From positions 62,001 to 126,000 of IMG/VR virus record IMGVR_UViG_3300015261_000001: a stretch of DNA of 64,000 nt; one strand, 5' to 3'. Positions within the stretch are counted from its first letter, which is position 1. Every line of letters begins with the position of its first letter. Shown piece after piece: positions 4,479 through 50,482 of the stretch. A program made the position numbers and the translations under genes. The notes under the pieces were generated by a model. That model was not told the origin of the DNA and did not search any database. It was given only the letters and a program-made list of their open reading frames with translations.

Positions 4479-4911
4479 GTTCGCCTCGCAGTTCTACCAT
4501 CAGGTAGGCAACGAGGTCAGCGAAGTGCTGGTTGCTGGTTACACAGATTTTCTGCGGAACTGGCTGGCCGTCGACCATGGTTTCTACATCACCCATTACG
4601 GCAAACTCTTCGTTGCCCGGGGTCACGCCGTCACGGATCAGACCTTGACGAACACGAGCCAGACGCAGCTTGGCTGCTTCGAGGATCAGGCGACCCTTGA
4701 TCGGGGAAACAGAGTTCCAGCGATCCAGTTGGTTCAGCAGATGGTCCTGTTCTTCTTCCGACATGGAGAAGCTGTCGTGGAATTTCACGTGGTTGCCAGT
4801 CAGCGCACGGATGTAGGCTTCCTGAACGAACTCCGCTTGAGCATGAGCACAGGTGACACCCAGTTCGGTGAGGTGGTCACGATAAGCAATAACGCGTGCC
4901 AAATGAGACAT
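4471..4911 (-). CDS. Hypothetical protein
   Basis: 146-aa ORF tightly packed in the operon. Confidence 0.65.
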   Translation of the reverse strand: MSHLARVIAYRDHLTELGVTCAHAQAEFVQEAYIRALTGNHVKFHDSFSMSEEEQDHLLNQLDRWNSVSPIKGRLILEAAKLRLARVRQGLIRDGVTPGNEEFAVMGDVETMVDGQPVPQKICVTSNQHFADLVAYLMVELRGEHE

Positions 4912-19910: not shown

Positions 19911-21920
19911 TTACGACACCGCCAAACTGAAGAAGCACTCGAGCGGACTGCCTTGACGGTTGACCATACGGAAGGTCTTGATCTCGTTCAGTACGTTCTG
20001 TTGCTTCTCGTAGATCATCAACATGCCAGCGCCGCGTCCATTGATAGCGTCAGCATAGTTGGAGAAGTATTTCGGAACATCGCCGTTAGCCAGCGAGCAA
20101 TCGTAATTGCTTGGATCACGGGTCACGGTGGAGAACAGCACGTTTTCCACATGCACCATGTTGATACCACGAATTTCTTGGTTGATCAAACTCCAATATT
20201 CAGCCCACACCTCACCGAAGATCTTCGGCGTGACGGTTTGTGCTTTCCACGCAGAGTTGCGCTTATTGTAAGTAATGAAGTTTTCCACACGAGCCCGGTG
20301 CATGTCCAGGTCTTCGCGGGTATACGGCAGGGTGAAGATTGGCGAAGTGGTGTTCCAACCACTCAAGTCGATCGAGATGTGTTTCTTCCCTTCGGCTTGC
20401 CAACCACGCTCCAGCACGTACTTCAAGAACTCCAACGAGAAACACGCATTACGCGACGAGACCGAAGTCCGTGCCGCGTGTTGTTGCACCGTGGTACCGC
20501 CCATCATGATGTCTTCGATCTGATAGCGGAATGTCACTTCCTGGAAGTACGGCAGCTTATCCAGACTCAGGTTATCCAGCATATCGAGCGAACGAATGTC
20601 AGACAGCACATTCACAATGTCCGCTTTAAGGATGAGATCCGAGCCCGGTGTACATACCTCAGCCTGAAGGAAGATTTCATCACCGTTGGAGCTGATGATG
20701 TTCTTGTCCTTGACGTGTGGTACGAACTGCCGTGTAACTGCGTTCCGAATGAAGTGCTTCGTCGACAACATACCCTGACCCATCGGGTTACAGATAGCCG
20801 TCGCCGAGTACATACCCACGTTTGCACTCTTACGCATCATCACGTTGTAGGGGACAGCCGACTTCAGCATACCGTAACAAACGCCGCACGGCACGCCTGA
20901 AAGATGGCTATTGCAGTAAGCGATGCTACGAACGTGAATTACTTCCCCCGCCTTAATATTCCACATAGTTTGGCTATCGATCAATTCCAGGCGCCCATCT
21001 TCGAACCGACGGAACTTACCTTGAAGGGATGACGCCATCGCGGCGTTAGCAACTTTGATCGGCACACACAGCTGAGTACCACAATCCCATTCGTGGTTAA
21101 TCGAGCTAATTACAGAGGTCAAAATGTGTGCTTTACGGTGGAACCACTCGGAGTCTTTCAGCGCCTTACCGTTGTTGGTCAGAGCTTTACCCGCAGCGTT
21201 ACGCTCACCCAAAGAGTCAGCCAGGTTGGTGATCCCGTGTGCATACGGAACCATTACCGCGTTCGGCATGATGGCGTTACTCAAGTCAAACACACCACCA
21301 CGAATTTCCGTGGTTTGATATGCTTGGTTGATACTCACGCCACCAGTACGCGCCAGCAGTGCAACTGTGTTCTGACCCAATGAGGGGGCTTCACGGATGT
21401 ACGAAGAGAACAACTCTTCACCTTCGTCGATGGTGATCTTCTTGGCCAGGATGTCATCCCGAATAGCCATGATACCATCATCTTCCATGAACTCTGCCAC
21501 AGACTCAGCAGTCGCAGAAATTGCCGACTGCTCGCTCATTACCACGATCAGGTTGTTGAGCTTGTTTTGCCAGATGTGAATCAACATCTTGATCCCGTCA
21601 ATTTCAACGGGGTCGTGTTTCGTTGGCATGATCCGTCTTAAGAACGTGTTGATGGGGATAGCGTTAGTGTTGTCGTCATAAACGATTTCCTTCGCGCCCT
21701 CCACCACGTTCGACGGGATCAACTCATCTACCGAGTAGGGAACGTCGTTATAACGACGGTGGATAATTAAACCCACCCACGTCAACATCAACACGAACGT
21801 ATCACTCAGTGCTGTAGCGCCGGAGTCATCAGTGACCTCCACCAGCATCCGAGTGCCTCGCCAACTCAACATCTTTTCTTCTGGACAATTGGCGAACTCG
21901 CGGAGATTGAGTTTAATCAT
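19911..21920 (-). CDS. Non-virion RNAP beta'-like C-terminal subunit (phiKZ gp74-like)
   Basis: KALKDSEWFHRK bridge helix, WDCGT..RSIAYC..PCGVCYG Zn site, NPMGQGMLSTKH trigger loop. Confidence 0.9.
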   Translation of the reverse strand: MIKLNLREFANCPEEKMLSWRGTRMLVEVTDDSGATALSDTFVLMLTWVGLIIHRRYNDVPYSVDELIPSNVVEGAKEIVYDDNTNAIPINTFLRRIMPTKHDPVEIDGIKMLIHIWQNKLNNLIVVMSEQSAISATAESVAEFMEDDGIMAIRDDILAKKITIDEGEELFSSYIREAPSLGQNTVALLARTGGVSINQAYQTTEIRGGVFDLSNAIMPNAVMVPYAHGITNLADSLGERNAAGKALTNNGKALKDSEWFHRKAHILTSVISSINHEWDCGTQLCVPIKVANAAMASSLQGKFRRFEDGRLELIDSQTMWNIKAGEVIHVRSIAYCNSHLSGVPCGVCYGMLKSAVPYNVMMRKSANVGMYSATAICNPMGQGMLSTKHFIRNAVTRQFVPHVKDKNIISSNGDEIFLQAEVCTPGSDLILKADIVNVLSDIRSLDMLDNLSLDKLPYFQEVTFRYQIEDIMMGGTTVQQHAARTSVSSRNACFSLEFLKYVLERGWQAEGKKHISIDLSGWNTTSPIFTLPYTREDLDMHRARVENFITYNKRNSAWKAQTVTPKIFGEVWAEYWSLINQEIRGINMVHVENVLFSTVTRDPSNYDCSLANGDVPKYFSNYADAINGRGAGMLMIYEKQQNVLNEIKTFRMVNRQGSPLECFFSLAVS

Positions 21921-24205
21921 TGCGCCGCTCCTTCATTCATGGCTTCTACCAGCGCTTTGGGGATCGCTAATGGTTCAGCTGGCAAACTATCTACCATCTG
22001 ATCCATCGTGTTGTAGGCTCGGTCCAGAGACGTCTCACGACGGTCTGTAGCGCGTTCCCGACGCAGAGTATAGCCGGAGTCCGACATCATGCTGAGCGAC
22101 ATCTTCAACGCACGGTTGCTGAGGTACTCTTCAGGCTTGATGAGTTGGTTAACGTTGAACGGGTCATCTGCACGGATAAGCCGTCTGGTAGCTTTTGCAC
22201 GGTTCTCTGGCGAATACGCCAAGGCAAGATGTTTCTCAGCTTCTTGCCCACCGGCTTGGCTAACTTCCAGACGCAGTTCAGTTTCACCCGAGTTCTTGTT
22301 GCCCTTGTCCGTCATTGGTGTAGCGTACTTGCCACTGTCGTTCATCTTGGCAGGCATACCGAACAAGTTAGACTTGGGCATGCTTTGCGCACTCATGTCT
22401 GCACCGAACTTGTCGAGCAGCATGATATCCTGATAACTGATCAAGATGGGGTTGGTGGTTTCTACGCGTTCGCCCAACGAGTTAACGAACATGGCTTTCT
22501 GCGGTTTGTAGCTGTACTTCTTCCGCAAGGCGTTAATGATGTTCACGCCGAACAGCTTGGTGTTACTGATCACATGCACAGAGATCTTGTTCTTGCAAAC
22601 GTAATCAACGTGTTCCTGCTTCTCTTCGTCAGTGACCAGAGCCATCTTGACAGTTTCCGCAAATTCTGGGAAACCGGTCTCGTAGAACTCCATCAGTTTG
22701 AAGTAGGCGGTTTTGTAGTCGCCCAAACGACGCAGGTGTTTCACTTCACGGTGCACGTTCATGTTGACGAAGTTAATACTCAACTCCATCAGCATCGAGA
22801 AGATCTGACGACGGAAAGCTGGCGTGTTGTTCACAATGAACTCAGCCCGAGTACCGTCTGGATAGCACGGTGCTTCGTGGTCTTCGATGATCAGAACGTT
22901 AACGCCCTTGTCACCGTTGAGACCGGCATACTTCCACTTCACACGACCCGCTACCGATTGCTTCAGTTCGATGTGAATGTTCCAGTCTTTCAGCTTCTCG
23001 CGTTTCTCTGCACGGCTCAACGGGTTGATCTTGCCGATGCCGTTGCGGGTGTAGTTACCATAAGCGTTCCGAATGAAGGTATCCAACTCCTTACTGATCG
23101 GAATTTCGTTGTTACGGGCCGCGTGGGTTTTCATCTCGTACCAACGAGTGACGTTATTCCACATTTCGTTTTGTTTCTTCTCGTGGCGATCGAGCATGGT
23201 GTTGTGACGCTGCTCGATGTAATCAGTACCACGATTGTTGGAACGGTTCTTCATCCGTTCAGACTTCACAGTCACCGACATTACGACGGCGTCACGTGGA
23301 GCATAGAACAGTTTGTCGTAGGTCAGGTCAGGTTCACGCAGCGACTTCTTGGTCAACGATACGAGAGCGTTTTCCTTGATGCGGCGGCGGAAGCCCATGA
23401 CGATACCGTCGTTACGAATTTCTTCACCAGCTTGCGGGAACGGCGATGGGTTCTCGTCGGTTCCGTACAGCATCAGTGGGATCCACTCGTCTTCGTTATA
23501 CCCGAAGCTACGATCATGTTTAAACATGCAACGCGACCGCTCCGCAAAGGAGCGGGTCATAATCACACCGTCCTCCTCAGTGCGATAGTCCGATAGCGCC
23601 GCTACCAGAGTTGGCATTGCAAAACACCACTCGCCGTTCTTGCTGATTCGAGGACTGCGGGCAAATACAGTACCCTTAGGGAATGTTGCCCCTTTCTTCA
23701 GCTTGCGCATGACGTCTTGGTCATACACGTACTCAAAACCGACGTAAGTGTTTTGCGTGTTGTACTTTGGCAGCTCGAGAATGTCGTAAGCATTCTTTTC
23801 GTCATTCTTATACAGAATGCGAATTGTGTTCCAGTCGTCTGTGAGCTTTTCCGGGTCCAGACTGTTGACGTAGAAGATTTCCTCTACTTCCATGTTGGCT
23901 GGAGCTTCGATGCGCCGTGCAGTCTTGGCGTACTGGAACTCAAACCCCGTAACCATCATCCGTTCGCCCGCCCCCTTCGTTGGCACGGACTTTGGAATCA
24001 TGTTACCAGCCATGTACAAACGACCCGCACTACTGTTCCAAGGGAACAGAATGAGGTTGTTACTGATCCCCACTAGTGCAGGGTGAATCTGGTTCTCACC
24101 GCACTCGTATTTGTACTTTACGGTCTCGGCGATTTCCGTTAACTCGAAGTCAAATGGTGTCTTGCCTTCGGTTTCAATCTCATTATCGCTCATGTTATCG
24201 CTCAT
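21917..24205 (-). CDS. Non-virion RNAP beta-like C-terminal subunit (phiKZ gp71-73-like), uninterrupted
   Basis: NSSAGRLYMAGNM, TEEDGVIM, KYAGLNGDKGV and KNSGETE match RpoB motifs. Confidence 0.9.
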   Translation of the reverse strand: MSDNMSDNEIETEGKTPFDFELTEIAETVKYKYECGENQIHPALVGISNNLILFPWNSSAGRLYMAGNMIPKSVPTKGAGERMMVTGFEFQYAKTARRIEAPANMEVEEIFYVNSLDPEKLTDDWNTIRILYKNDEKNAYDILELPKYNTQNTYVGFEYVYDQDVMRKLKKGATFPKGTVFARSPRISKNGEWCFAMPTLVAALSDYRTEEDGVIMTRSFAERSRCMFKHDRSFGYNEDEWIPLMLYGTDENPSPFPQAGEEIRNDGIVMGFRRRIKENALVSLTKKSLREPDLTYDKLFYAPRDAVVMSVTVKSERMKNRSNNRGTDYIEQRHNTMLDRHEKKQNEMWNNVTRWYEMKTHAARNNEIPISKELDTFIRNAYGNYTRNGIGKINPLSRAEKREKLKDWNIHIELKQSVAGRVKWKYAGLNGDKGVNVLIIEDHEAPCYPDGTRAEFIVNNTPAFRRQIFSMLMELSINFVNMNVHREVKHLRRLGDYKTAYFKLMEFYETGFPEFAETVKMALVTDEEKQEHVDYVCKNKISVHVISNTKLFGVNIINALRKKYSYKPQKAMFVNSLGERVETTNPILISYQDIMLLDKFGADMSAQSMPKSNLFGMPAKMNDSGKYATPMTDKGNKNSGETELRLEVSQAGGQEAEKHLALAYSPENRAKATRRLIRADDPFNVNQLIKPEEYLSNRALKMSLSMMSDSGYTLRRERATDRRETSLDRAYNTMDQMVDSLPAEPLAIPKALVEAMNEGAAQ

Positions 24206-27640: not shown

Positions 27641-29197
27641 TCAAGCGTTGATTTGCCGAATCAACCGCATGAATTCGTTCTTGATTTCAATTTCGATCTC
27701 GAGGCTGAACAACGCGCCACGTTCTACGCGGCTGTAAACTTCCTCGTCATCCAACACTGCGTATTCCAGGTTGGACTTCCACTGACCGTTACCGAAGAAC
27801 TCGAGGAAATCCGTCGCAGCCTCGATTGCTTCGTTAAATGAACGTCCTTCGTCATTACGACTTTGGATGTCACAGATACTGGCCAGGAACTCTTTGTCTT
27901 CAGTGTTGAGCTTCAGCCCGTCCGGCAGAGAACGCATGCCGTCTGGATCGTTGATTGCACCCAGTACCGAAGGCAAGTAGTGATAACCCCATTCGCTCAA
28001 ACGGACTTGAGCCAAAGCAATTGCCGCCATCAACTGGTTGTAGTCGCAGGCCCAGTAGATCATCGACGGAACTTCTTCGTAGAAGGTCAGTTGTAGCAGT
28101 TTGATAACGTGGTCGCCCAGTTCAAATTCCCAGGTCGGCGGAATGTTGTCGAAGACACGTTCTACCAGTTTTGGGTTCTTGATCTTCAGACCAAGGCATG
28201 GAATCTTGAAGCGATCGACATGACGCTCTTTGTCGTTCTCGTCAAACAACCCCACGCTGAAATACTCGGCCGCCATGATTTCGTTGGTGGCTTTGATTTC
28301 TTCGTTAATCTGATAACGCTCATACAACGAACGTTTATCTTCTTCACCTTCGGAACGGTCATCCTTCTTGCGGAAGGTACTGCCGCTGGATTCATGCTGG
28401 CGTACTGCCGCGTTGATCGCAGTGGCGAGGTTCTTCTCTTCTTCCGTTTCTGGAATGACTGCGCAGCACAACCGACTGAAGATCGTGTTGAACAGTACAC
28501 GGTCGATGAAGTATTCCTGACTACCCACGGCGTCCACTTGCTGTGGGATACCGCGCTTGTTGAAAGCGAAGTCCACATACGTCTGAAGCTTGCTCCAACC
28601 GTACATGTTGATGATGTGTGGATTGTCCTTGATCAGACTACCGCACACCAACTCGCTGTAACCCGAACCCATTGTCGAATCGAAACGACTCGTCAACGAG
28701 AAGATGATCGGATAGATCACGCGCACAACGAAAGTGAACTTTACCAGTTCCTTATAGTCGTACTCAGTAATCGTGGTCTGTGATGGATAGTCGCCTTTAC
28801 TGGCAGCGATGCTCAGTTCAGGTGGAACCACCATGTGGCCAGAGTACTGGATAAAAGAACAGAACTTAGGAACGTCAATGAAGTCCAGAATCGCATCGGT
28901 AATCGGTTTGATCTGGGTCAGTTCTAAGTTGTAGTCCTTGAACGCTGGGCTCTCTGCAACAGTGTGAGCCTTCTCGAACAATTTGAACAGTTCTTGTTTA
29001 CGCTCGGTGTCGAAAGTGCTCTCGACGTACTCGTTGAAGCAGCTGAAAAGATTAGGCTCAGGAGCGTCCTTCTCTTTAACAACGGCCTCCAACTTGATAC
29101 CGGCGTCACCATTGAAGCGCAGAATGTGTTCGTTCAGGCTAATAATGATTGCTTTTATAGTCTTTTTAGACTTCCGCTTCACTTCAATGTTAAACAT
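27641..29197 (-). CDS. Non-virion RNAP promoter-specificity subunit (phiKZ gp68-like)
   Basis: ~518 aa, helical, SD GGAG before ATG 29197. Assigned by synteny. Confidence 0.7.
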   Translation of the reverse strand: MFNIEVKRKSKKTIKAIIISLNEHILRFNGDAGIKLEAVVKEKDAPEPNLFSCFNEYVESTFDTERKQELFKLFEKAHTVAESPAFKDYNLELTQIKPITDAILDFIDVPKFCSFIQYSGHMVVPPELSIAASKGDYPSQTTITEYDYKELVKFTFVVRVIYPIIFSLTSRFDSTMGSGYSELVCGSLIKDNPHIINMYGWSKLQTYVDFAFNKRGIPQQVDAVGSQEYFIDRVLFNTIFSRLCCAVIPETEEEKNLATAINAAVRQHESSGSTFRKKDDRSEGEEDKRSLYERYQINEEIKATNEIMAAEYFSVGLFDENDKERHVDRFKIPCLGLKIKNPKLVERVFDNIPPTWEFELGDHVIKLLQLTFYEEVPSMIYWACDYNQLMAAIALAQVRLSEWGYHYLPSVLGAINDPDGMRSLPDGLKLNTEDKEFLASICDIQSRNDEGRSFNEAIEAATDFLEFFGNGQWKSNLEYAVLDDEEVYSRVERGALFSLEIEIEIKNEFMRLIRQINA

Positions 29198-29227
29198 TGA
29201 GATACTCCGATTGATCAATTCAACCTA

Positions 29228-35716: not shown

Positions 35717-37720
35717 TTAGCCGAAAGCGACGCCGCTGCCGAACACACCCATTGCGTTCAGGTTGTTCATGTTGTTGCTGCCCACAGAAGCGTGGGTGGC
35801 CAGGCCGGCACCTGGAGCGTAAACCAGTTGGTTCGGACGGAAGCTGGCGATGGTGTTGGCCACGTTCAGAGTACCGATCGAATCCAGGGTTTCGCCGATC
35901 AGAGCCATCAGGTTTGGATCCCAGACGCACGACTGAGCGAAGCTGTTGATATGGACGTTACCGTCGAAGATCGACTGGTTCAGTTCCATACGCAGTTTCT
36001 GGCAGCGCGCCTTGAAGTCTTCCTGAGTTTGGCCGTACTGGATGGACAGGTAGTTCATGATGGACTGTTGGCCACCTTTACCCTTGACGTGACCGAGCAG
36101 CATCTCGTCGACTTCCAGCGTGTTCAGCTCTTTGTTGCCGAGCTTGGCCAGGCCGTTGACCACGATCATCTGCGTGCGGTGCAGCGCAGGCTTGTCGATG
36201 GTCCAACCGGTGTTGTTGTTGATGTTGCGTTGCAGCAGTTCCGAGAACTTGTTGCCGGACATTGCGTCCAGGACCGCGACCATGGTGCGAATTTCTTCGG
36301 TGCGGTTCTTCGACGACAGGTTCAGCAGGAAGTTGTTCACCGACGCATCAGGACCGTTGGTCACGATGTTGGTACGGAAGGTTGCGTGCTGGCTGACGTT
36401 CTGACGGATCCACTGGTTCACCAGATCGGTGTCAGTGATGGTCTTGTCGTTCAGCTGCGGACGCTGACCCATGAACACGCCTTGCAGCAGGCTGTCGATG
36501 CGCGGCTCCAGAGCGCTCAGGTTGCCACGGCTACCAACGCTCAGCTTACGCAGAGCTTCGGTGAACACGTAGTCGGTGTTGGTCGACATCAGCAGGTACA
36601 GACCGAAGAAGTACGGGAACAGACCCTGGTTGTAGTTCATCATCTCGCCAGCGATAGCCGATTCGATGGTGATCACAGGGTGCAGTGGACGGTAACCGTT
36701 CGGGTACAGACCGCCGTTCATGCCCAGGAACGCCTGGATTGCATCGGTTTGTTGCAGGTTGCCACGCGACGCAGCCAGGTTGGCCATGTGCGCTTGGTAG
36801 GTGATACCGGACAGCTGCACGGTAGCGGTAACGCGGCAGATCTCTTTCGAGTTCGCCTGCACCGACGCCGGGTTGTTGATGTTGTTGATGGTGGAAGCCA
36901 CTACTTCCATGTTGGCCGGAGACAGGGTGCCTGCCTTGGTCACACGGTCCTGGATGGCGCTGACGCGAGCTTCGGCGTAACCGTCTTTACCGAAAGGTTG
37001 CTTCGGATCTTTGAACGGCGACGGCAGAGCCATGTCGGCGGCAGGCAGGTCGTGAGTGATCTTCACCAGAACTGCGGTTTCCCACTGACCGGCCAGGTAG
37101 TTGGCCAGACGCGCAACGCGGTCTTTCGGATCGCCCGCTTCCGGGTGGTTCAGCATTTCCAGGTCGACGACGGTCATGTTGACGATCGCGACTTGTTTCA
37201 GGCCTTGTTGCTCGGCCAGCGCCATGAAGTGCTTGCGCAGGTTTTCGATGACGAACTTGTCAGCGTAGCTGGTTGGTACCAGCGGGATGCTGATCTGAGT
37301 GGCGCCCATGCCGCCGACGTTGTTGATGCGGATCGGCTCGGAGCTGATGGTCAGCTCTTTGTTGGAGAACAGCACGCCCATTACCCAGAAGGTGTTGTTG
37401 ACCAGCTTGTACAGAACCAGACCAGGCAGGATGCCGGAGATGGTGGTGGTCATCAGGTCGATGTCCGGCAGGATCGCGAGTTGCGCCTGAGGAGTAGTCG
37501 AGCCCGACAGTTGTTTGTAGTTCTTCTTCATGGCTTCTGCAACTTCGCCGACCTCGATGAGGTTGCGGTTGTCAGCAGTCATGGAAGTGGTTGCGAACAG
37601 AGATGCCAGGCCGGCGATGTCTTGATGACCTGCGAGGGAGCCGTTCTCGGCAGCTTCGTTCGAGTTGTCCCAGTTAGTGCCAGTAGTTTTGCCGGCGGCT
37701 GCGCCACGTTTTACAGTCAT
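35717..37720 (-). CDS. chmA: Chimallin, phage nuclear shell protein (phiKZ gp54-like)
   Basis: 667 aa, immediately upstream of the gp55-like gene, extreme high-expression codon bias, early promoter, flexible N- and C-terminal tails. Confidence 0.85.
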   Translation of the reverse strand: MTVKRGAAAGKTTGTNWDNSNEAAENGSLAGHQDIAGLASLFATTSMTADNRNLIEVGEVAEAMKKNYKQLSGSTTPQAQLAILPDIDLMTTTISGILPGLVLYKLVNNTFWVMGVLFSNKELTISSEPIRINNVGGMGATQISIPLVPTSYADKFVIENLRKHFMALAEQQGLKQVAIVNMTVVDLEMLNHPEAGDPKDRVARLANYLAGQWETAVLVKITHDLPAADMALPSPFKDPKQPFGKDGYAEARVSAIQDRVTKAGTLSPANMEVVASTINNINNPASVQANSKEICRVTATVQLSGITYQAHMANLAASRGNLQQTDAIQAFLGMNGGLYPNGYRPLHPVITIESAIAGEMMNYNQGLFPYFFGLYLLMSTNTDYVFTEALRKLSVGSRGNLSALEPRIDSLLQGVFMGQRPQLNDKTITDTDLVNQWIRQNVSQHATFRTNIVTNGPDASVNNFLLNLSSKNRTEEIRTMVAVLDAMSGNKFSELLQRNINNNTGWTIDKPALHRTQMIVVNGLAKLGNKELNTLEVDEMLLGHVKGKGGQQSIMNYLSIQYGQTQEDFKARCQKLRMELNQSIFDGNVHINSFAQSCVWDPNLMALIGETLDSIGTLNVANTIASFRPNQLVYAPGAGLATHASVGSNNMNNLNAMGVFGSGVAFG

Positions 37721-44943: not shown

Positions 44944-45930
44944 TTACAACACCATGCCCAGGCTGTTCGAGCCAGTGCTGACGTCTTTCTGCTTGGTGTA
45001 GTCGACAGCCACTTTGGACTTGGCTTCATCGACGCCTTCGATTTCTTCTTGCAACGCGGCCAGAGCGTCGCCGTGGTCCAGAACGATGTGCAGCTGGGTC
45101 ATCTCTTTCGGCAGGTTGACATCTTTACCGAACACGCCGGTGGTGCGATACATCGAACCGACGAACATCGGGATGATTTCGTTGCTGGTACGGAACAGGC
45201 TGGCTACTGCGACCGGAGGCTTGCCTTCGAAGTCAGAAGAAGTCTTCTGGTCGAAGAACTGGATACGGCTCAGCGCTGGCGGAACCTTGCCGCGAGCGGA
45301 GTAGTTGAAGATACGCTTGATATCTTCGTAGTCCATTTCGGTGTTGCTGGCGTCGAACAGGATGCTCAGCAGGTTCAGGCCGCCGACGATTTCTTCGTTG
45401 ACTTCGCCGCGGGTTTTGTCGACGGTGTTCTCGTACGGGATGTAGCACATTGGAGCGCCGAGCTGGCTTTCCGCAGTTTGGTTGGCGAACGAGGTCAGGC
45501 CGCCGACGGAGTTTTCTTTCTCGATGACCGAGGTATGATCGGAAACCAAGCACAGTACTGCAACGTGGCCAGCTTGGATCAGCAGACGAGCAACCAGTAC
45601 AGCGAGCATGCTGCCGGTACCGCCAGCGGTGTTCGAGATGATGACGTTGTAGCGACCGGCTTTGTGTTTCTTGATCACGGCTTCAACGAAAGGGATGGCC
45701 TTTTCGAAGTTGACCGATTTGTCCTTACCGCTACCCAGCGCACCTTCGATGCGTTCAACAACGAACTGGTCGGCGCTGCCGTTTTTGTCGCTGGAATCCA
45801 GACCGATGAAGCGGGCGTTTTTGTTGCCCAGGGTTTTGGCGCCTTTCTTCAATTCGAGAGACAGGTTGATCCCGGTACCGCCACAAGCCCAGTAAGTGAT
45901 GTCGGAAAAGTTTTCGGTGGTCTTAGACAT
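44944..45930 (-). CDS. phuZ: PhuZ tubulin
   Basis: ACGGTGIN, LDSS, GSGKD, tubulin signature AGGTGS, T7-loop-like MDYEDI, 328 aa. Confidence 0.95.
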   Translation of the reverse strand: MSKTTENFSDITYWACGGTGINLSLELKKGAKTLGNKNARFIGLDSSDKNGSADQFVVERIEGALGSGKDKSVNFEKAIPFVEAVIKKHKAGRYNVIISNTAGGTGSMLAVLVARLLIQAGHVAVLCLVSDHTSVIEKENSVGGLTSFANQTAESQLGAPMCYIPYENTVDKTRGEVNEEIVGGLNLLSILFDASNTEMDYEDIKRIFNYSARGKVPPALSRIQFFDQKTSSDFEGKPPVAVASLFRTSNEIIPMFVGSMYRTTGVFGKDVNLPKEMTQLHIVLDHGDALAALQEEIEGVDEAKSKVAVDYTKQKDVSTGSNSLGMVL

Positions 45931-45998
45931 GAACGAGACTCTCTATATGAGTACATGAAATTGGAGCAAAGCTAAATACTGTTCGCTTTACTAATCAA

Positions 45999-46015
45999 AT
46001 AATTTAGGTCTGAAA
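45999..46015 (-). promoter_or_regulatory. Early promoter motif
   Basis: TTTCAGACCTAAATTAT upstream of phuZ. Confidence 0.7.
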
Positions 46016-46041
46016 TATTCCAGTCCAGTTTTGTCTCCGGC

Positions 46042-46182
46042 ATAAAAATAAACCCCAGCAGACCCGAACGAAGGGGGTGAGCCTGCCAGGGCATCTCAAG
46101 TGAGATAAATTGCCTGTAAGGAGAACATCACCGCCAAACCACCTGAGAACCATGGCCAGGTCAACAAAGCGGTACTGACGGT
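46042..46182 (-). ncRNA. Candidate small RNA 2
   Basis: No ORF in the track. Several stem-loops. The terminal stem pairs fully only with G-U on the minus strand and is followed by a U tract. Confidence 0.45.
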
Positions 46183-46203
46183 ATAAGATATCCTCTTCGG
46201 GTG

Positions 46204-46415
46204 AAAAATAAAAACGCGAAATAGAACCTTACCCCAGCAACCCGAAGGAAGCTGGGGTAAGGGTGGGGGAATTTGTAGGCAACTTCCTCGTAGGAAAGAC
46301 AGAGATAACCTAAACCGAAGAAGGTGTGAGCGGTGCTCCCCCTAACCTACTCACGAAACACAACCACAAAACGGGCGTAAACCGAAACTGCTGCGACACA
46401 ATCCACGAGGTTCAC
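46204..46415 (-). ncRNA. Candidate small RNA 1 (or long structured 3' UTR)
   Basis: Begins at a TATG late-start motif (46415-46418). Ends in a cUUCGg-capped hairpin (46227-46262) plus U tract. Confidence 0.45.
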
Positions 46416-46427
46416 ATACAATGAACA

Positions 46428-47090
46428 CTAGAGGAACTCCGCATACTCTTCGTTCTGCAACAACTCACGCAGATCGTTAAGTTGAGTACGGATTTCTTCA
46501 TCGCTGCTAACGGCCGTGTTGAGGATGTCGCGCATGTCGGAGATAAGGTTGGACAAAGTAGCGGTGACAGGTTCGTCCTCGCGCCAATGCACTACCTTAC
46601 CTTTCCATGCCTCCCAGACCTGTACACGACCACCGGTATGCGAGTCGTATTTGATCGCAGCCTTTACCGCATCTTCCGCTGGTTTGCCAATTGACATAAC
46701 AGCGTCGGCCAATACCGCACCGCTACCGATGGCATATGGACCGGTAACAATGAAGATGTTGGTGTTGGTTGCATGCTCACCGCTCTTGTAATCCCAGCAG
46801 AGCACTTCTCCGTTCTTACCGACCGCCAGCAATTGAAAGCTGGCATCGAGGTCATCCATAACCGTATCGACAGTAACACCCTTGGCCAATTCCTGCTTGA
46901 TGCGCTGTGCCAAGAGCGTATCGCCGCACAAACCAAAGGCTGCAATTTCCACGTTGTTGATGTACCACGTTACATCAGGGTGAGCGATAAAGAGTCGTCG
47001 CGATGCTTCTTGGCGACTTTTCTCATCTTCTTCATCCGATGAATGTGAATCACTTGCCAGGTTCTTGCCGTCCCACGCTACAGTTGACAT
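46428..47090 (-). CDS. HslV/proteasome-beta (Ntn-hydrolase)-like protein with non-canonical catalytic residues
   Basis: (M)STVAWDG..LASDS, GLCG, AIGSGA, DSHTGG. Ser at position 1 and Arg at the Lys33-equivalent position. Confidence 0.85.
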   Translation of the reverse strand: MSTVAWDGKNLASDSHSSDEEDEKSRQEASRRLFIAHPDVTWYINNVEIAAFGLCGDTLLAQRIKQELAKGVTVDTVMDDLDASFQLLAVGKNGEVLCWDYKSGEHATNTNIFIVTGPYAIGSGAVLADAVMSIGKPAEDAVKAAIKYDSHTGGRVQVWEAWKGKVVHWREDEPVTATLSNLISDMRDILNTAVSSDEEIRTQLNDLRELLQNEEYAEFL

Positions 47091-47108
47091 GAGAAGTACC
47101 CCCGAGGG

Positions 47109-47792
47109 TTAGTGGGTGAGTTGTGGGGCTTTCTCCGACTCTTCCTCAGCTGGTGGGGAAGGGAGCGGATGCATGTCCCGGGTGATGTCTTTGATCAAGC
47201 TGGTCAATTGCTCGATGGACATATCGCCCACCTTGCTACCAACTTCCTTGATGTTGACTTCTGGAGGCGCTGGGCGGGTGCTCAGCACTTCTGGAATAGG
47301 TGGCAGATTGAAGATCTGCAAATCACCACCACAGCTGATGTCCAGCTTGATGGCAGCCTTAACGCCTGCTTGAGCGCGACCTTTCTTGCCGATCTCCATT
47401 TGGGAGTAAGCATAAGGCGCGCCGCTACCTACAGCCACCGGCGGATCCATTGGGATACACACTACGTCCTGCTTGCCAGTACGAGCAGGGTGACCGCTGA
47501 TGACGTAGCAGGAGCCGTTCTCCAGAACACACAGAGCATCGAAGCTCAGATCGATTTCAGGTTGCAGTACCGAACGGTAGGTAATGCCCTTTTGCAGCAT
47601 CTCCCGAACGTAAGGAATCGCAGTAGCGCCACCAGCAAACCCGTAAGCCAGTACCTTTACCCCGTTGATTTCCCAGTACTCGTCTTCTTTGGGTGTAAAC
47701 AGTTTCTGGCCACCAGCAGGCAACTTCATATCAGCCATGGTCATTTGGCTGTCGGTTACCAATTCTTGGCCATCATAAGCAACTACAGTCAT
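47109..47792 (-). CDS. HslV/proteasome-beta (Ntn-hydrolase)-like protease
   Basis: (M)TVVAYDG..LVTDSQ..QKLF (Thr1, with Asp-Lys spacing of 16 as in HslV), GFAG, AVGSGA, DISCGG. Confidence 0.88.
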   Translation of the reverse strand: MTVVAYDGQELVTDSQMTMADMKLPAGGQKLFTPKEDEYWEINGVKVLAYGFAGGATAIPYVREMLQKGITYRSVLQPEIDLSFDALCVLENGSCYVISGHPARTGKQDVVCIPMDPPVAVGSGAPYAYSQMEIGKKGRAQAGVKAAIKLDISCGGDLQIFNLPPIPEVLSTRPAPPEVNIKEVGSKVGDMSIEQLTSLIKDITRDMHPLPSPPAEEESEKAPQLTH

Positions 47793-47871
47793 CGTTATTC
47801 TCCTTCGTTCTATTCAAAAGGTACGCGTACAGCAAAAATCGGTATACCATATCGCTATTAGTATCAAACTA

Positions 47872-47888
47872 ATGATGTAGGTTTCAAA
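47872..47888 (-). promoter_or_regulatory. Early promoter motif
   Basis: TTTGAAACCTACATCAT upstream of the HslV-like pair. Confidence 0.65.
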
Positions 47889-47938
47889 TTCCCTGAGTGC
47901 ATAATAAACCCTACCCATTCCTTTTCAGGGAATGAGTG

Positions 47939-48143
47939 TTTTAAGGTTTGTATTTATAATAACTATATTTCTTTAAGTTATTTTTTATTTTGTGCATAGG
48001 CCCTACGGGCCTAGGTAAAGCAAGAACAAGAGCAAAGCAAGTTAACTACGTTAACCAGTCTAATCCTCCCCCAGAGTAATCCTTATTCCGTTCCGTCTCC
48101 CGAAGGGATACTCCACTACATAAGTCTTACTCTTACCCCCTCC
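47939..48143 (-). other. AT-rich tract plus three DNA-type hairpins; candidate origin or packaging element
   Basis: AT tract 47939-47991. Hairpins at 47997-48013, 48041-48055 and 48073-48133. Confidence 0.45.
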
Positions 48144-48248: not shown

Positions 48249-49094
48249 ATGAACTGTGTGGATTACGCAATCGAGCGAGTGCAGAATAGTGATATCGACG
48301 AATACCTACTGAAGCTTGCTTTTGAAAACCCTAACGCCAACTACCAAGGGAACTGGTACGGTCAAGGGAACCTTACCACCGTAGCTCAAGGTATCCGCGA
48401 ACGAGTGATTCACAAGACTTGCCTGCCAGCCAGTAACTGCAACGGCGGCAAGACTGAGTTGATCGACTTGGGCGGTTCCATGATGCGCGGGTTGGGTAAC
48501 GGTTGTATTGAAGTCAACGTTCCTGAGATCACTACTCGGGGTGCGAAGATCATCAGCGTCACGGAGGTTTATCTCGGCAGCATGCAATCGGCTACCGGGC
48601 AACTCGGTATGGGCGTGAACGAGAACTCCACTTGTGGTGTTGGTTCTCTGAACTCGATGTTGGGCGGCATGATTGACGCGCTGGCTCCAAGTGCTTCGAT
48701 GCAAACCACTTACACCGACGTGCACATGACCGGTAACAACTGTTTCGTGATCTTTGGTATCAACATGGGGACTTACTCCATGACGGCCAAAGTAATCCTG
48801 GAATACGACGAAGGCATGAGTTCGATTCACCCTCGTCACTGGGAGAACTTTGCAGAGTTGGTGGAATGGGCTGTTAAGGCTCACATCTACCGTGTCTGCA
48901 AACGCCCTACTCAAGAAGCAGTGTATCGCTCGGGTGTTCCGCTGGAAGGTATCCGCGATGACATCATGGAGTACCGTGATGCGTGGCAGGGCTACAAAGA
49001 CTACCTGAAGGACACTTGGAGAGCCTGCATGGCTTGGAGCGACAAACAGGCGGTACATGAAGGTATCCGCATGTCGGTGCCGAGGAGAATGTAA
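48249..49094 (+). CDS. Conserved hypothetical, probable virion protein
   Basis: 281 aa, SD GGAG, TATG upstream, TAATG coupling to the next gene. Confidence 0.65.
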   Translation: MNCVDYAIERVQNSDIDEYLLKLAFENPNANYQGNWYGQGNLTTVAQGIRERVIHKTCLPASNCNGGKTELIDLGGSMMRGLGNGCIEVNVPEITTRGAKIISVTEVYLGSMQSATGQLGMGVNENSTCGVGSLNSMLGGMIDALAPSASMQTTYTDVHMTGNNCFVIFGINMGTYSMTAKVILEYDEGMSSIHPRHWENFAELVEWAVKAHIYRVCKRPTQEAVYRSGVPLEGIRDDIMEYRDAWQGYKDYLKDTWRACMAWSDKQAVHEGIRMSVPRRM

Positions 49095-50482
49095 TGGGTG
49101 CTTTCCACAACTCCCTCTGGGATGACGGGACGGAAGTCTTCAGTCTCTTTGAGGGACTTGAGTCACACGTCGTATCCTGGAACCCCCTCTACAGCCATTT
49201 ACGCGATGAGGGGCAGGTCGATGGTTTGGAGGCTTTGCTTCCTGGCGTTAACTTCGAATCGAACAACGCTATTCTGGTTGTGTTCGACAAGATGGCGACT
49301 TATCTGGACGTGACCCCGAAATGGGCAGCAGCGCTCCACAAGTACGTGTACAACTTCATCACCCGCAAGGTTGGCATGACCGACCACATGGCTTTCTTCG
49401 GGGCACCGTATCTGGGTCTGGAGAAGATCACCTTTACCACGGCTGACCGTAACCAGTGGTTCAGTGAGATCTTCGACTGCGATGAAGATGAGCTGCGGGA
49501 GAACCTGCACGCGTGCACGGCGATCAAGAAGGAGTGGGCAGTAGTAGGTGATGCGTTCAACATGACCATCCCTTACCTGCTCTACCGGATCAACAAGAGC
49601 AAGCTGGACGAGAAGACCAAGCACCGCGCGATGGTGGACGTTGTGTCCATGTATCACTACAAGTGTTTGACCAGTATCGTCCACAACGACTATCCGTTCA
49701 CTGCTCGGAAAGAAGTCGTGCTGGAAACCTACAACCGCCTGAGTCTGAAATACGACATCAAGCGTTACGGTAGCTGGCGAGCCCTGATCGAAGCACGAGC
49801 CGAATACATCATCAACCCGAAGACAGGTATTCACTTCGAAGCCTTCACGAAAATGGATGACGACAAGAAAATCGTCTACATGGTTGGTGACATTCAGAAC
49901 CGTCTGCGTCGGGCAATCAACGACATCAACAAAGTGTTCCACGATGTGAAGAACAAAACCAACATCGTGAAGGTAGAGGGCGCGCACGTTAACCTCCAAG
50001 ACGAGTTGACCATCAAGTCGGTTTCCAAGGAAGTTAACCAGCACGTCATGTACCTGGACCGAATCCTCACGGAAGAGACATCGTTCTTCAAAGAAGAGCT
50101 GATGGAATATGCGGTTGGCGTCCTAGACGGTGTTCGGATGGACATGCTCACGTATGTTCTGCAAGAATTCCCCAAACGCTACAACAATCCTAAAAAACCC
50201 GAGTACAAGCAATTCGCTGAAACCGTGGTGCTGCACATGTTTGAATACCTGCACACCAATGGTATCAAGAAGAGCAATGTGTACAACGTGCTCATCAAGA
50301 TGCGCGGGGCGTACGGGGCCAGCCGCAGTAACAACGACATGGTTAAGGTGATCCGTGATCTGGGTGACCAGATTGTAATTGAGATCACTGGTCGTAAAAC
50401 ACCACAGTGGGTACTCACCACGCGCACTGCCTTGAGTCTCTTCATGGTACTGCGTGTAATTTCCAAAGACTATTTCGAATAA
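49094..50482 (+). CDS. Conserved helical protein, probable head protein
   Basis: 462 aa with N-terminal DGTE, EGLE and DGLE putative maturation sites. Confidence 0.65.
   Translation: MGAFHNSLWDDGTEVFSLFEGLESHVVSWNPLYSHLRDEGQVDGLEALLPGVNFESNNAILVVFDKMATYLDVTPKWAAALHKYVYNFITRKVGMTDHMAFFGAPYLGLEKITFTTADRNQWFSEIFDCDEDELRENLHACTAIKKEWAVVGDAFNMTIPYLLYRINKSKLDEKTKHRAMVDVVSMYHYKCLTSIVHNDYPFTARKEVVLETYNRLSLKYDIKRYGSWRALIEARAEYIINPKTGIHFEAFTKMDDDKKIVYMVGDIQNRLRRAINDINKVFHDVKNKTNIVKVEGAHVNLQDELTIKSVSKEVNQHVMYLDRILTEETSFFKEELMEYAVGVLDGVRMDMLTYVLQEFPKRYNNPKKPEYKQFAETVVLHMFEYLHTNGIKKSNVYNVLIKMRGAYGASRSNNDMVKVIRDLGDQIVIEITGRKTPQWVLTTRTALSLFMVLRVISKDYFE

What the first reader, a model, noticed from the sequence alone, without database searches (positions are those of the whole stretch)
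46428..47792. Early-expressed tandem proteasome-beta/HslV-like pair, one canonical and one catalytically altered
Seen: 47109 has Thr1, Asp13 and Lys29 (HslV Asp17/Lys33 spacing), GSG and DxxxGG. 46428 has Ser1, an acidic insertion (SSDEEDEK) and Arg at the Lys position. Both carry a linker plus helical C-terminal extension. No AAA+ partner is present in this window. Inference: a two-subunit phage proteasome-like particle (active plus regulatory subunit, recalling alpha/beta rings) beside phuZ, possibly degrading host defence proteins or protein conjugates.
Basis: partly seen in the sequence, partly recalled or inferred. Interest (0 to 1): 0.7.

Follow-up and report, generated by a model that had tools for sequence, protein, structure and literature searches.

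The report
Tandem phage HslV-like peptidase pair
A nucleus-forming jumbo phage from rhizosphere metagenomes carries two adjacent, co-transcribed genes for small proteasome/HslV-type peptidases, one with a full active site and one with a damaged one. Its relatives carry one to four such genes at the same spot, which suggests, but does not prove, a mixed-subunit phage protease that works without a phage-encoded unfoldase.

Summary
Window 47109-47792 (-) and 46428-47090 (-) are paralogs (34% identity, E 5e-23). Both have the proteasome-beta/HslV Ntn-hydrolase fold: AF2 pLDDT is 93 for each, VIA-align gives Z 17.9 to E. coli HslV, and the family profile matches HslV at hhalign probability 96.9%.

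Gene A keeps Thr1/Asp/Lys, GSG and D..GG. Gene B has Ser1 and Arg at the Lys position. In yeast beta5, K33R inactivates the site.

The pair lies 18 nt apart, behind an early-type phage promoter motif and ahead of a conserved terminator, directly upstream of phuZ. The complete 238-kb genome encodes no AAA+ partner.

New here: EL-like relatives carry arrays of 1-4 paralogs at this locus. Every array keeps at least one canonical copy. Copies with an altered catalytic Thr or Lys occur only inside arrays (0 of 67 singletons, 7 of 13 arrays). Gene B also evolves much faster than gene A.

The best reading is a hetero-oligomeric, unfoldase-independent HslV-like peptidase with A as the catalytic subunit and B as a non-catalytic one. 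This is inferred, not shown: the one complex prediction gave no answer. The substrate is unknown.

The family name "peptidase HslV family" already exists in phage annotation. The arrays with altered-site copies appear undescribed.

The parts
47109..47792 (-). Gene A (P0002, 227 aa): canonical HslV-like Ntn peptidase. The core is about residues 1-165, followed by a PPxPE..S.RP linker, an amphipathic helix at 193-207 and an acidic/Pro tail.
   Evidence: It hits phrog_1040 at E 7.7e-24. The AF2 model has pLDDT 93.1. VIA-align gives Z 17.9 to E. coli HslV over 145 residues at rmsd 2.1 Å, with Thr2 aligned to Thr1. T2, D14, K30, GSG and D..GG are all present.
46428..47090 (-). Gene B (P0001, 220 aa): paralog with Ser at the nucleophile position, Arg at the Lys position, an acidic loop at residues 16-31 and a C-terminal extension of three helices.
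   Evidence: It is 34% identical to A and hits phrog_1040 at E 9.4e-24. The AF2 model has pLDDT 92.7, and Foldseek's top hits are 20S beta subunits and HslV. The family alignment shows S at T2 in 4/132 sequences and R at K30 in 2/132. Its end branch is 1.19, against 0.24-0.86 for its orthologs.
47091..47108 (-). 18-nt spacer between A and B, holding a G-rich ribosome-binding site.
   Evidence: Sequence read. Gaps of -16 to +20 nt are the rule in related arrays.
47865..47893 (-). Early-type phage promoter motif, 73 nt upstream of the gene A start.
   Evidence: It is one of 21 sites in the 238-kb genome. All are on the - strand, 26-127 nt upstream of ORFs, with no hits scoring between 12 and 24.5 bits. 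The same class precedes chimallin, nvRNAP beta, a GroEL-like gene and phuZ. Bioinformatically found conserved motifs in these phages are early promoters (PMC7598289).
47800..47806 (-). Shine-Dalgarno GAAGGAG, 7 nt before the ATG of gene A.
   Evidence: Sequence read.
46203..46264 (-). Long stem-loop plus T-run: intrinsic terminator of the A-B operon.
   Evidence: The stem is conserved, with compensatory changes, in 6 phages including EL.
44944..45930 (-). phuZ (tubulin), with its own copy of the promoter motif at 45992-46020.
   Evidence: It hits phrog_4733 at E 1.7e-79. The synteny with the HslV-like genes is seen in EL and in all related contigs.

Best explanation
The two genes are an early-transcribed bicistronic operon. 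They encode two paralogous subunits of a small, propeptide-less HslV-type N-terminal-nucleophile peptidase.

Gene A supplies the active sites: Thr1 exposed by Met removal, plus Asp and Lys. Gene B has Ser1 and Arg in place of Lys, so it is catalytically dead or strongly impaired. It is kept as a non-catalytic structural or regulatory subunit that co-assembles with A into a self-compartmentalised ring particle. The closest parallel is the mix of active and inactive beta subunits in proteasomes.

The phage encodes no AAA+ unfoldase. The particle therefore either works on unfolded or short polypeptides by itself, perhaps gated by the helical C-terminal tails, or borrows a host unfoldase.

Shown: fold, family, residue states, operon anatomy and comparative pattern. 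Inferred: hetero-assembly, the inactivity of B and the timing of expression. Unknown: the substrate.
For: Homology and fold:
- The family profile matches proteasome beta5 at E 5.7e-11 and HslV at E 4e-9, with T1, D17, K33, GSG and SGG aligned.
- hhalign against E. coli HslV gives probability 96.9%, E 1.9e-10.
- VIA-align gives Z 17.9.
- 25 of 132 relatives hit PF00227.

Active site:
- Across 132 family members, T is present in 128, D in 132 and K in 130.
- In yeast beta5, K33R inactivates the site and T1S lowers activity by 40-45% (PMC4792962).

Operon:
- The genes are 18 nt apart. There is an early-type promoter upstream and a covarying terminator downstream.

Comparative pattern:
- The same locus holds 1 gene in EL, 2 in the window, L005, L006, L014, L008, L010 and L027, 3 in L011, L013 and L029, and 4 in L028.
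- Every array keeps at least one full T/D/K copy.
- In 80 IMG/VR loci, all 67 singletons are T/D/K. A non-Thr nucleophile occurs only in arrays, in 7 of 13.
- All 9 clade-B members whose context was read lie beside another paralog, a clade-A gene wherever DNA was held.
- A is 65-70% identical to its L005 ortholog, but B only 41%.
- B still folds confidently, and its tail pattern (aromatic residue near the C-terminus) is shared with its orthologs.

No unfoldase.
Against: - There is no direct evidence that A binds B. The one complex prediction returned 'no answer'.
- The B orthologs in the nearest relatives (L005, L006, L014) keep Thr and Lys. Hetero-assembly, if real, therefore did not start as an active/inactive pairing.
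- Ser1 can be a working nucleophile.
- Neither protein reaches the Pfam or NCBIfam thresholds by itself.
- Expression timing rests on a motif class, not on RNA data. No RNA run holds this phage.
- The altered-site copies in the survey come from few independent lineages, so the Fisher p of 5e-7 overstates the support.
Confidence: 0.5

Rival explanations
1. A and B form two separate homo-oligomeric peptidases with different specificities. B remains active with a Ser nucleophile, and its acidic substrate loop changes its specificity.
For: T1S proteasomes keep activity. B keeps Asp, GSG and GG. The B orthologs in L005, L006 and L014 look fully active. L029 has three canonical copies.
Against: K33R inactivates beta5. 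Ser or Gly at position 1 combined with Arg at the Lys position arose again in a separate third-gene clade alongside other losses, which looks like decay of catalysis. Copies with an altered site are never found alone.
Confidence: 0.2
2. The phage subunits dock onto a host AAA+ unfoldase (HslU or similar), replacing or competing with host HslV. This would redirect or block host ATP-dependent proteolysis.
For: E. coli HslV is the closest solved structure. No phage unfoldase is encoded. Another chimallivirus, RAY, encodes an HslU-like ATPase.
Against: The phage core is shorter than HslV in the helix region after the GFAG strand. Long C-terminal tails cover unknown surfaces. The host is unknown. 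The resemblance of B's C-terminus to the HslU tail is weak and not conserved.
Confidence: 0.15
3. B is a pseudo-enzyme with a job of its own, such as a decoy, adaptor or inhibitor of a host factor, independent of A.
For: B shows fast divergence, a strongly acidic loop and a distinct helical tail.
Against: Operon coupling with A is conserved, and no clade-B gene was seen without a clade-A gene.
Confidence: 0.1
4. They are not proteases but another kind of Ntn enzyme (an amidohydrolase or a Connectase-like ligase), or they are virion maturation proteases.
For: The Ntn fold supports other chemistries.
Against: The full proteasome-type residue set is conserved. The promoter class is that of chimallin and nvRNAP, not one placed before structural genes. 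No structural genes lie in the operon.
Confidence: 0.05

Closest known systems
Bacterial HslV (ClpQ), MEROPS T1B
   Same: Both share the alpha-beta-beta-alpha Ntn fold (Z 17.9, rmsd 2.1 Å over 145 residues). Both start Met-Thr with no propeptide. The Asp/Lys spacing, GFAG and GSG motifs match. The size is similar.
   Different: There is no adjacent or genome-encoded HslU. The core is about 10 residues shorter and has a single helix where HslV has a longer helical segment. C-terminal extensions of 55-65 residues are added. The genes come as paralog arrays with altered-site copies. They do not reach curated HMM cut-offs.
20S proteasome beta subunits, including archaeal/actinobacterial and eukaryotic active plus inactive beta paralogs
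   Same: The catalytic residue set is the same, including the D-x-x-S/T/C-G-G motif. Paralogs that lose Thr1 or Lys33 sit beside active ones. The K-to-R change matches the yeast beta5 K33R mutant, whose active site is inactive.
   Different: There is no propeptide and no alpha subunit. The ring order and stoichiometry are unknown. Hetero-assembly is not shown here.
BPH and Anbu (bacterial proteasome homologs without a known unfoldase)
   Same: Both are stand-alone proteasome-like genes with no partner ATPase. The fold match is similar (BPH Z 16.2; Anbu among the Foldseek hits).
   Different: They belong to different sequence families. BPH and Anbu are single-gene homo-oligomers in cells, not phage paralog arrays.
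Phage 'peptidase HslV family' genes (phrog_1040), e.g. Pseudomonas phage EL gp15 and SPN3US-like gene 1
   Same: They belong to the same family. EL gp15 sits at the same locus, directly upstream of phuZ.
   Different: EL and most phages carry a single canonical copy. The window carries two, one of them with an altered site. None has been characterised in the papers I could search.

Membership tests
Proteasome/HslV superfamily (MEROPS T1, Ntn hydrolases) | Four-layer alpha-beta-beta-alpha Ntn fold | tested here: met
   The AF2 models have pLDDT 93.1 and 92.7. Foldseek's top hits are HslV, 20S beta, BPH and Anbu. VIA-align gives Z 17.9.
Proteasome/HslV superfamily (MEROPS T1, Ntn hydrolases) | Significant sequence-profile homology | tested here: met
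   The profile matches PDB entries at E 5.7e-11 (beta5) and 4e-9 (HslV). hhalign gives 96.9%. 25 of 132 relatives hit PF00227. The two window proteins alone do not reach Pfam or NCBIfam cut-offs.
Proteasome/HslV superfamily (MEROPS T1, Ntn hydrolases) | N-terminal Thr nucleophile with Asp17 and Lys33 equivalents | tested here: met
   Met for gene A (T2, D14, K30). Not met for gene B, which has S2, D14 and R at the Lys position.
HslV (ClpQ) proper | Nucleophile exposed by Met removal, with no propeptide | tested here: met
   The ORFs start M-T and M-S. 131 of 149 representatives start MT and align from residue 1. Actual Met removal was not measured.
HslV (ClpQ) proper | Partner HslU AAA+ ATPase, usually in one operon | tested here: not met
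   PF00004, PF07724 and RAY gp116 found nothing in the complete genome, while the controls were positive.
HslV (ClpQ) proper | Double hexameric ring | not testable with these tools
   Only one complex job was allowed, and it gave no answer.
20S proteasome beta subunit | Propeptide removed autocatalytically, and assembly on an alpha ring | tested here: not met
   There is no propeptide. The genome holds only these two paralogs and no alpha-like gene.
Peptidase activity | Hydrolysis of peptides, and sensitivity to proteasome inhibitors | not testable with these tools
   This needs a bench assay.

The most novel reading that the evidence does not exclude
EL-like nucleus-forming phages build a heteromeric proteasome-like particle from 1-4 tandem paralogs, including pseudo-catalytic subunits and subunits with large C-terminal domains. 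It works without any phage unfoldase and is made at the very start of infection. This would be a viral, independent replay of the active/inactive subunit diversification seen in eukaryotic 20S proteasomes.
Probability: 0.35. Interest if true: 0.8.

Novelty: new variant of a known kind. Interest (0 to 1): 0.6.

Why it matters
Phage "HslV family peptidase" genes are widely annotated, but the papers I could search describe no function for them.

This locus gives a concrete, testable system: an early-expressed, partner-less proteasome-type peptidase in nucleus-forming phages. It has repeatedly duplicated, and one copy per array has repeatedly lost catalytic residues.

If the subunits co-assemble, it would be a compact model for how heteromeric proteasome rings with inactive subunits evolve. 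It would also point to targeted proteolysis as an early step in jumbo-phage takeover.

Tried and rejected
- **Complex prediction.** Complex prediction on A + B (full length, own alignments) returned 'no answer', score 0.00. It is not used for or against binding.
- **Direct database hits.** Pfam, NCBIfam and PDB-sequence searches with the single proteins found nothing meaningful.
- **DNA search.** Megablast of the locus against phage records gave no match.
- **Wide locus search.** The search for related loci with the wide alignment A2 failed because it has no conserved stretch. It was repeated with A1.
- **RNA evidence.** Only four DNA metagenome runs hold the locus, so expression could not be read.
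- **RAY gp116.** This nucleus-localised protein looked like a characterised homolog. It is in fact an HslU-like AAA+ ATPase, not an HslV-like protein, and it has no relative in this genome. RAY gp56 matches the family only weakly (E 0.009).
- **HslU tail mimicry.** I considered that B's C-terminus mimics the activating HslU tail, which ends in FIL in E. coli. B ends in EFL, but its orthologs end in SLH, SLT and YPS. The idea is rejected as unsupported.
- **Six-fold ring arithmetic.** I considered that array sizes of 1, 2 or 3 fit a six-fold ring. A four-gene array weakens this.
- **Rfam.** The flanking spacers gave only a sub-threshold whalefall-1 hit.

Full report
**What is there.**
On the - strand the window has three consecutive genes: gene A (47109-47792, 227 aa, P0002), gene B (46428-47090, 220 aa, P0001) and phuZ (44944-45930). 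A and B are 34% identical over 166 residues, E 5e-23. Both match phrog_1040 "peptidase HslV family" at about 1e-23. Neither matches Pfam, NCBIfam or PDB sequences directly.

The window is bases 62001-126000 of a complete 238,193-bp IMG/VR virus record with terminal repeats. It was recovered from rhizosphere metagenomes. The record is a nucleus-forming phage with chimallin, nvRNAP beta, PhuZ and a GroEL-like gene. Its nearest cultured relative is Pseudomonas phage EL: PhuZ is 49% identical and EL gp15 is 36% identical to A.

**Are they really proteasome/HslV-type?**
An exhaustive profile search found 5410 cluster representatives at E<=1e-3. Nearly all align from residue 1, and 131 of 149 start MT.

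- In a 132-sequence alignment, Asp14 is invariant, Thr2 is present in 128 and Lys30 in 130. GSG and GG are near-invariant.
- That profile hits proteasome beta5 (E 5.7e-11), archaeal beta, and HslV (E 4e-9), with Thr1, Asp17, Lys33, GSG and SGG in register.
- It matches E. coli HslV by hhalign at probability 96.9%.
- 25 of the 132 members hit PF00227 by themselves.
- The AF2 models are confident, with pLDDT 93.1 and 92.7.
- Foldseek returns HslV, 20S beta, BPH and Anbu.
- VIA-align gives Z 17.9 to E. coli HslV over 145 residues at rmsd 2.1 Å, with model Thr2 on HslV Thr1.

Superfamily membership is therefore well supported, with HslV marginally the closest. The core has only one helix between the GFAG strand and the next sheet, where HslV has a longer helical segment.

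**The two active sites.**
A has the complete set. B has Ser for the nucleophile and Arg for the Lys. It keeps Asp, GSG and GG, and its loop at residues 16-31 is strongly acidic, with only two inserted residues.

In yeast beta5, T1S lowers activity by 40-45%, and K33R leaves the site inactive because Arg33 cannot bond to Asp17 (PMC4792962). By analogy B is inactive or badly impaired. This is an inference.

**Operon and timing.**
A and B are 18 nt apart. A has a GAAGGAG ribosome-binding site.

At 47865-47893 lies a 29-nt motif (consensus ATTTcAaACCTATATTAC). It occurs 21 times in the genome, always on the - strand and 26-127 nt upstream of an ORF, with no intermediate-scoring sites. Other copies precede chimallin, nvRNAP beta, the GroEL-like gene and phuZ. 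A review states that motifs found this way in RNAP-encoding jumbo phages are early, vRNAP-dependent promoters (PMC7598289).

After B there is a long stem-loop with a T-run, conserved with compensatory changes from this phage to EL.

So A-B is most likely an early bicistronic transcript. No RNA data exist to confirm this.

**No unfoldase.**
AAA (PF00004), AAA_2 (PF07724) and the HslU-like protein of phage RAY find nothing in the complete genome. The controls were positive.

The nucleus-localised RAY gp116 reported as "HslVU family" is the ATPase, not a homolog of A or B.

**Comparative pattern (the main new result).**
The same locus lies between a divergent DUF7484 gene and phuZ. It holds the following numbers of paralogs:

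| Paralogs | Where |
|---|---|
| 1 | EL |
| 2 | window, L005, L006, L014, L008, L010, L027 |
| 3 | L011, L013, L029 |
| 4 | L028 |

- Gaps within arrays are mostly -16 to +20 nt.
- Trees separate a clade A (all first genes plus EL gp15, and lineage-specific duplicates in L008 and L010) from a clade B (the window's B, the second genes of L005, L006, L013 and L014, and a third-gene group).
- Every array keeps at least one full Thr/Asp/Lys copy.
- The altered copies are the window's B (S, R), L010_g2 (S), L011_g3 (S, R), L013_g3 and L028_g4 (G, R), L027_g1 (G, T, Y) and L028_g2 (N, A, W; 450 aa).
- The window's B sits among second-gene orthologs that keep Thr and Lys. Its Ser/Arg state is therefore recent and convergent with the third-gene group. 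Its branch is about 1.4 to 5 times as long as theirs.
- A is 65-70% identical to its L005 ortholog, but B only 41%.
- In 80 IMG/VR loci, all 67 single-copy loci are Thr/Asp/Lys. All 13 arrays lie beside phuZ, and 7 of them hold a Ser1 copy. Fisher's test gives p 5e-7, but the loci are related, so the number of independent events is small.

**Interpretation.**
Several features fit subunits of one assembly:

- tight coupling of the genes in one operon;
- altered-site copies that never stand alone;
- a confidently folding B with a conserved tail;
- faster evolution of B than of A.

This is how inactive proteasome beta subunits behave. It is not proof. The only complex prediction allowed gave no answer and is not counted either way.

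B is not alpha-like, because it lacks an N-terminal extension. Substrates, ring order and any use of a host unfoldase remain open.

**Novelty.**
The family label exists in PHROGs and RefSeq. One paper notes HslV-like genes without HslU in a Salmonella jumbo phage (PMC7823757). A broad jumbo-phage survey does not mention the family. I found no description of the tandem arrays or of the altered-site copies.

My verdict is a new variant of a known kind, of moderate to high interest.

Noticed in passing
window 48064-48143 (- strand); also L005, L014, L029, L011, and EL (L001 ~4484-4575): A conserved element of about 80 nt lies in the divergent spacer upstream of gene A. A 60-nt hairpin is flanked by GGAGGGGG and GGGGGAGG. 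It is nearly identical in four phages whose proteins are only 45-70% identical. EL and L011 carry many compensatory changes. A conserved ATTGTATG lies just upstream. It may be an unannotated structured RNA. The only Rfam match is sub-threshold (whalefall-1, E 0.31).
   Followed up: partly
window 45931-46427 (- strand): The roughly 500-nt spacer between gene B and phuZ has invariant blocks (GGTTAGG, GTTGCCTA, TATCTTATACC, CCATGGTT) shared with EL. These lie beside the covarying terminator hairpin and a second hairpin with a T-run at about 46041-46091. That is more conservation than a plain terminator needs.
   Followed up: partly
whole genome G000; in the window at 47865-47893, 45992-46020, and upstream of 35717-37720, 27641-29218 and 21917-24205: There are 21 copies of an early-promoter-like motif (ATTTcAaACCTATATTAC). 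All are on the - strand, in front of chimallin, nvRNAP beta, a GroEL-like gene, phuZ and others.
   Followed up: yes
L028:439-3897: A related 240-kb phage has four tandem paralogs. One of them (450 aa) has lost every catalytic motif and carries a C-terminal domain of about 280 residues with unknown fold.
   Followed up: partly
L029:2497-3020 and L030: Two unrelated 87-aa ORFs are inserted inside a three-paralog array.
   Followed up: no
G000:C1:205288-206934 (outside the window): The genome holds a GroEL-like chaperonin gene (phrog_5725, E 5e-135), as in phage EL, behind the same promoter class as the peptidase pair.
   Followed up: no
Erwinia phage RAY, KU886224: 86352-88061 and 49561-50109: RAY gp116, published as nucleus-localised, is an HslU-like AAA+ ATPase. 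Only gp56 is faintly HslV-like (E 0.009). Some chimalliviruses thus carry the ATPase half and others the peptidase half.
   Followed up: partly
window 48249-49094 (+) and 49094-50482 (+): A DUF7484 gene and a gene of about 460 aa are divergently transcribed from the peptidase operon. They are syntenic in every related contig and in EL (gp14, gp13).
   Followed up: no
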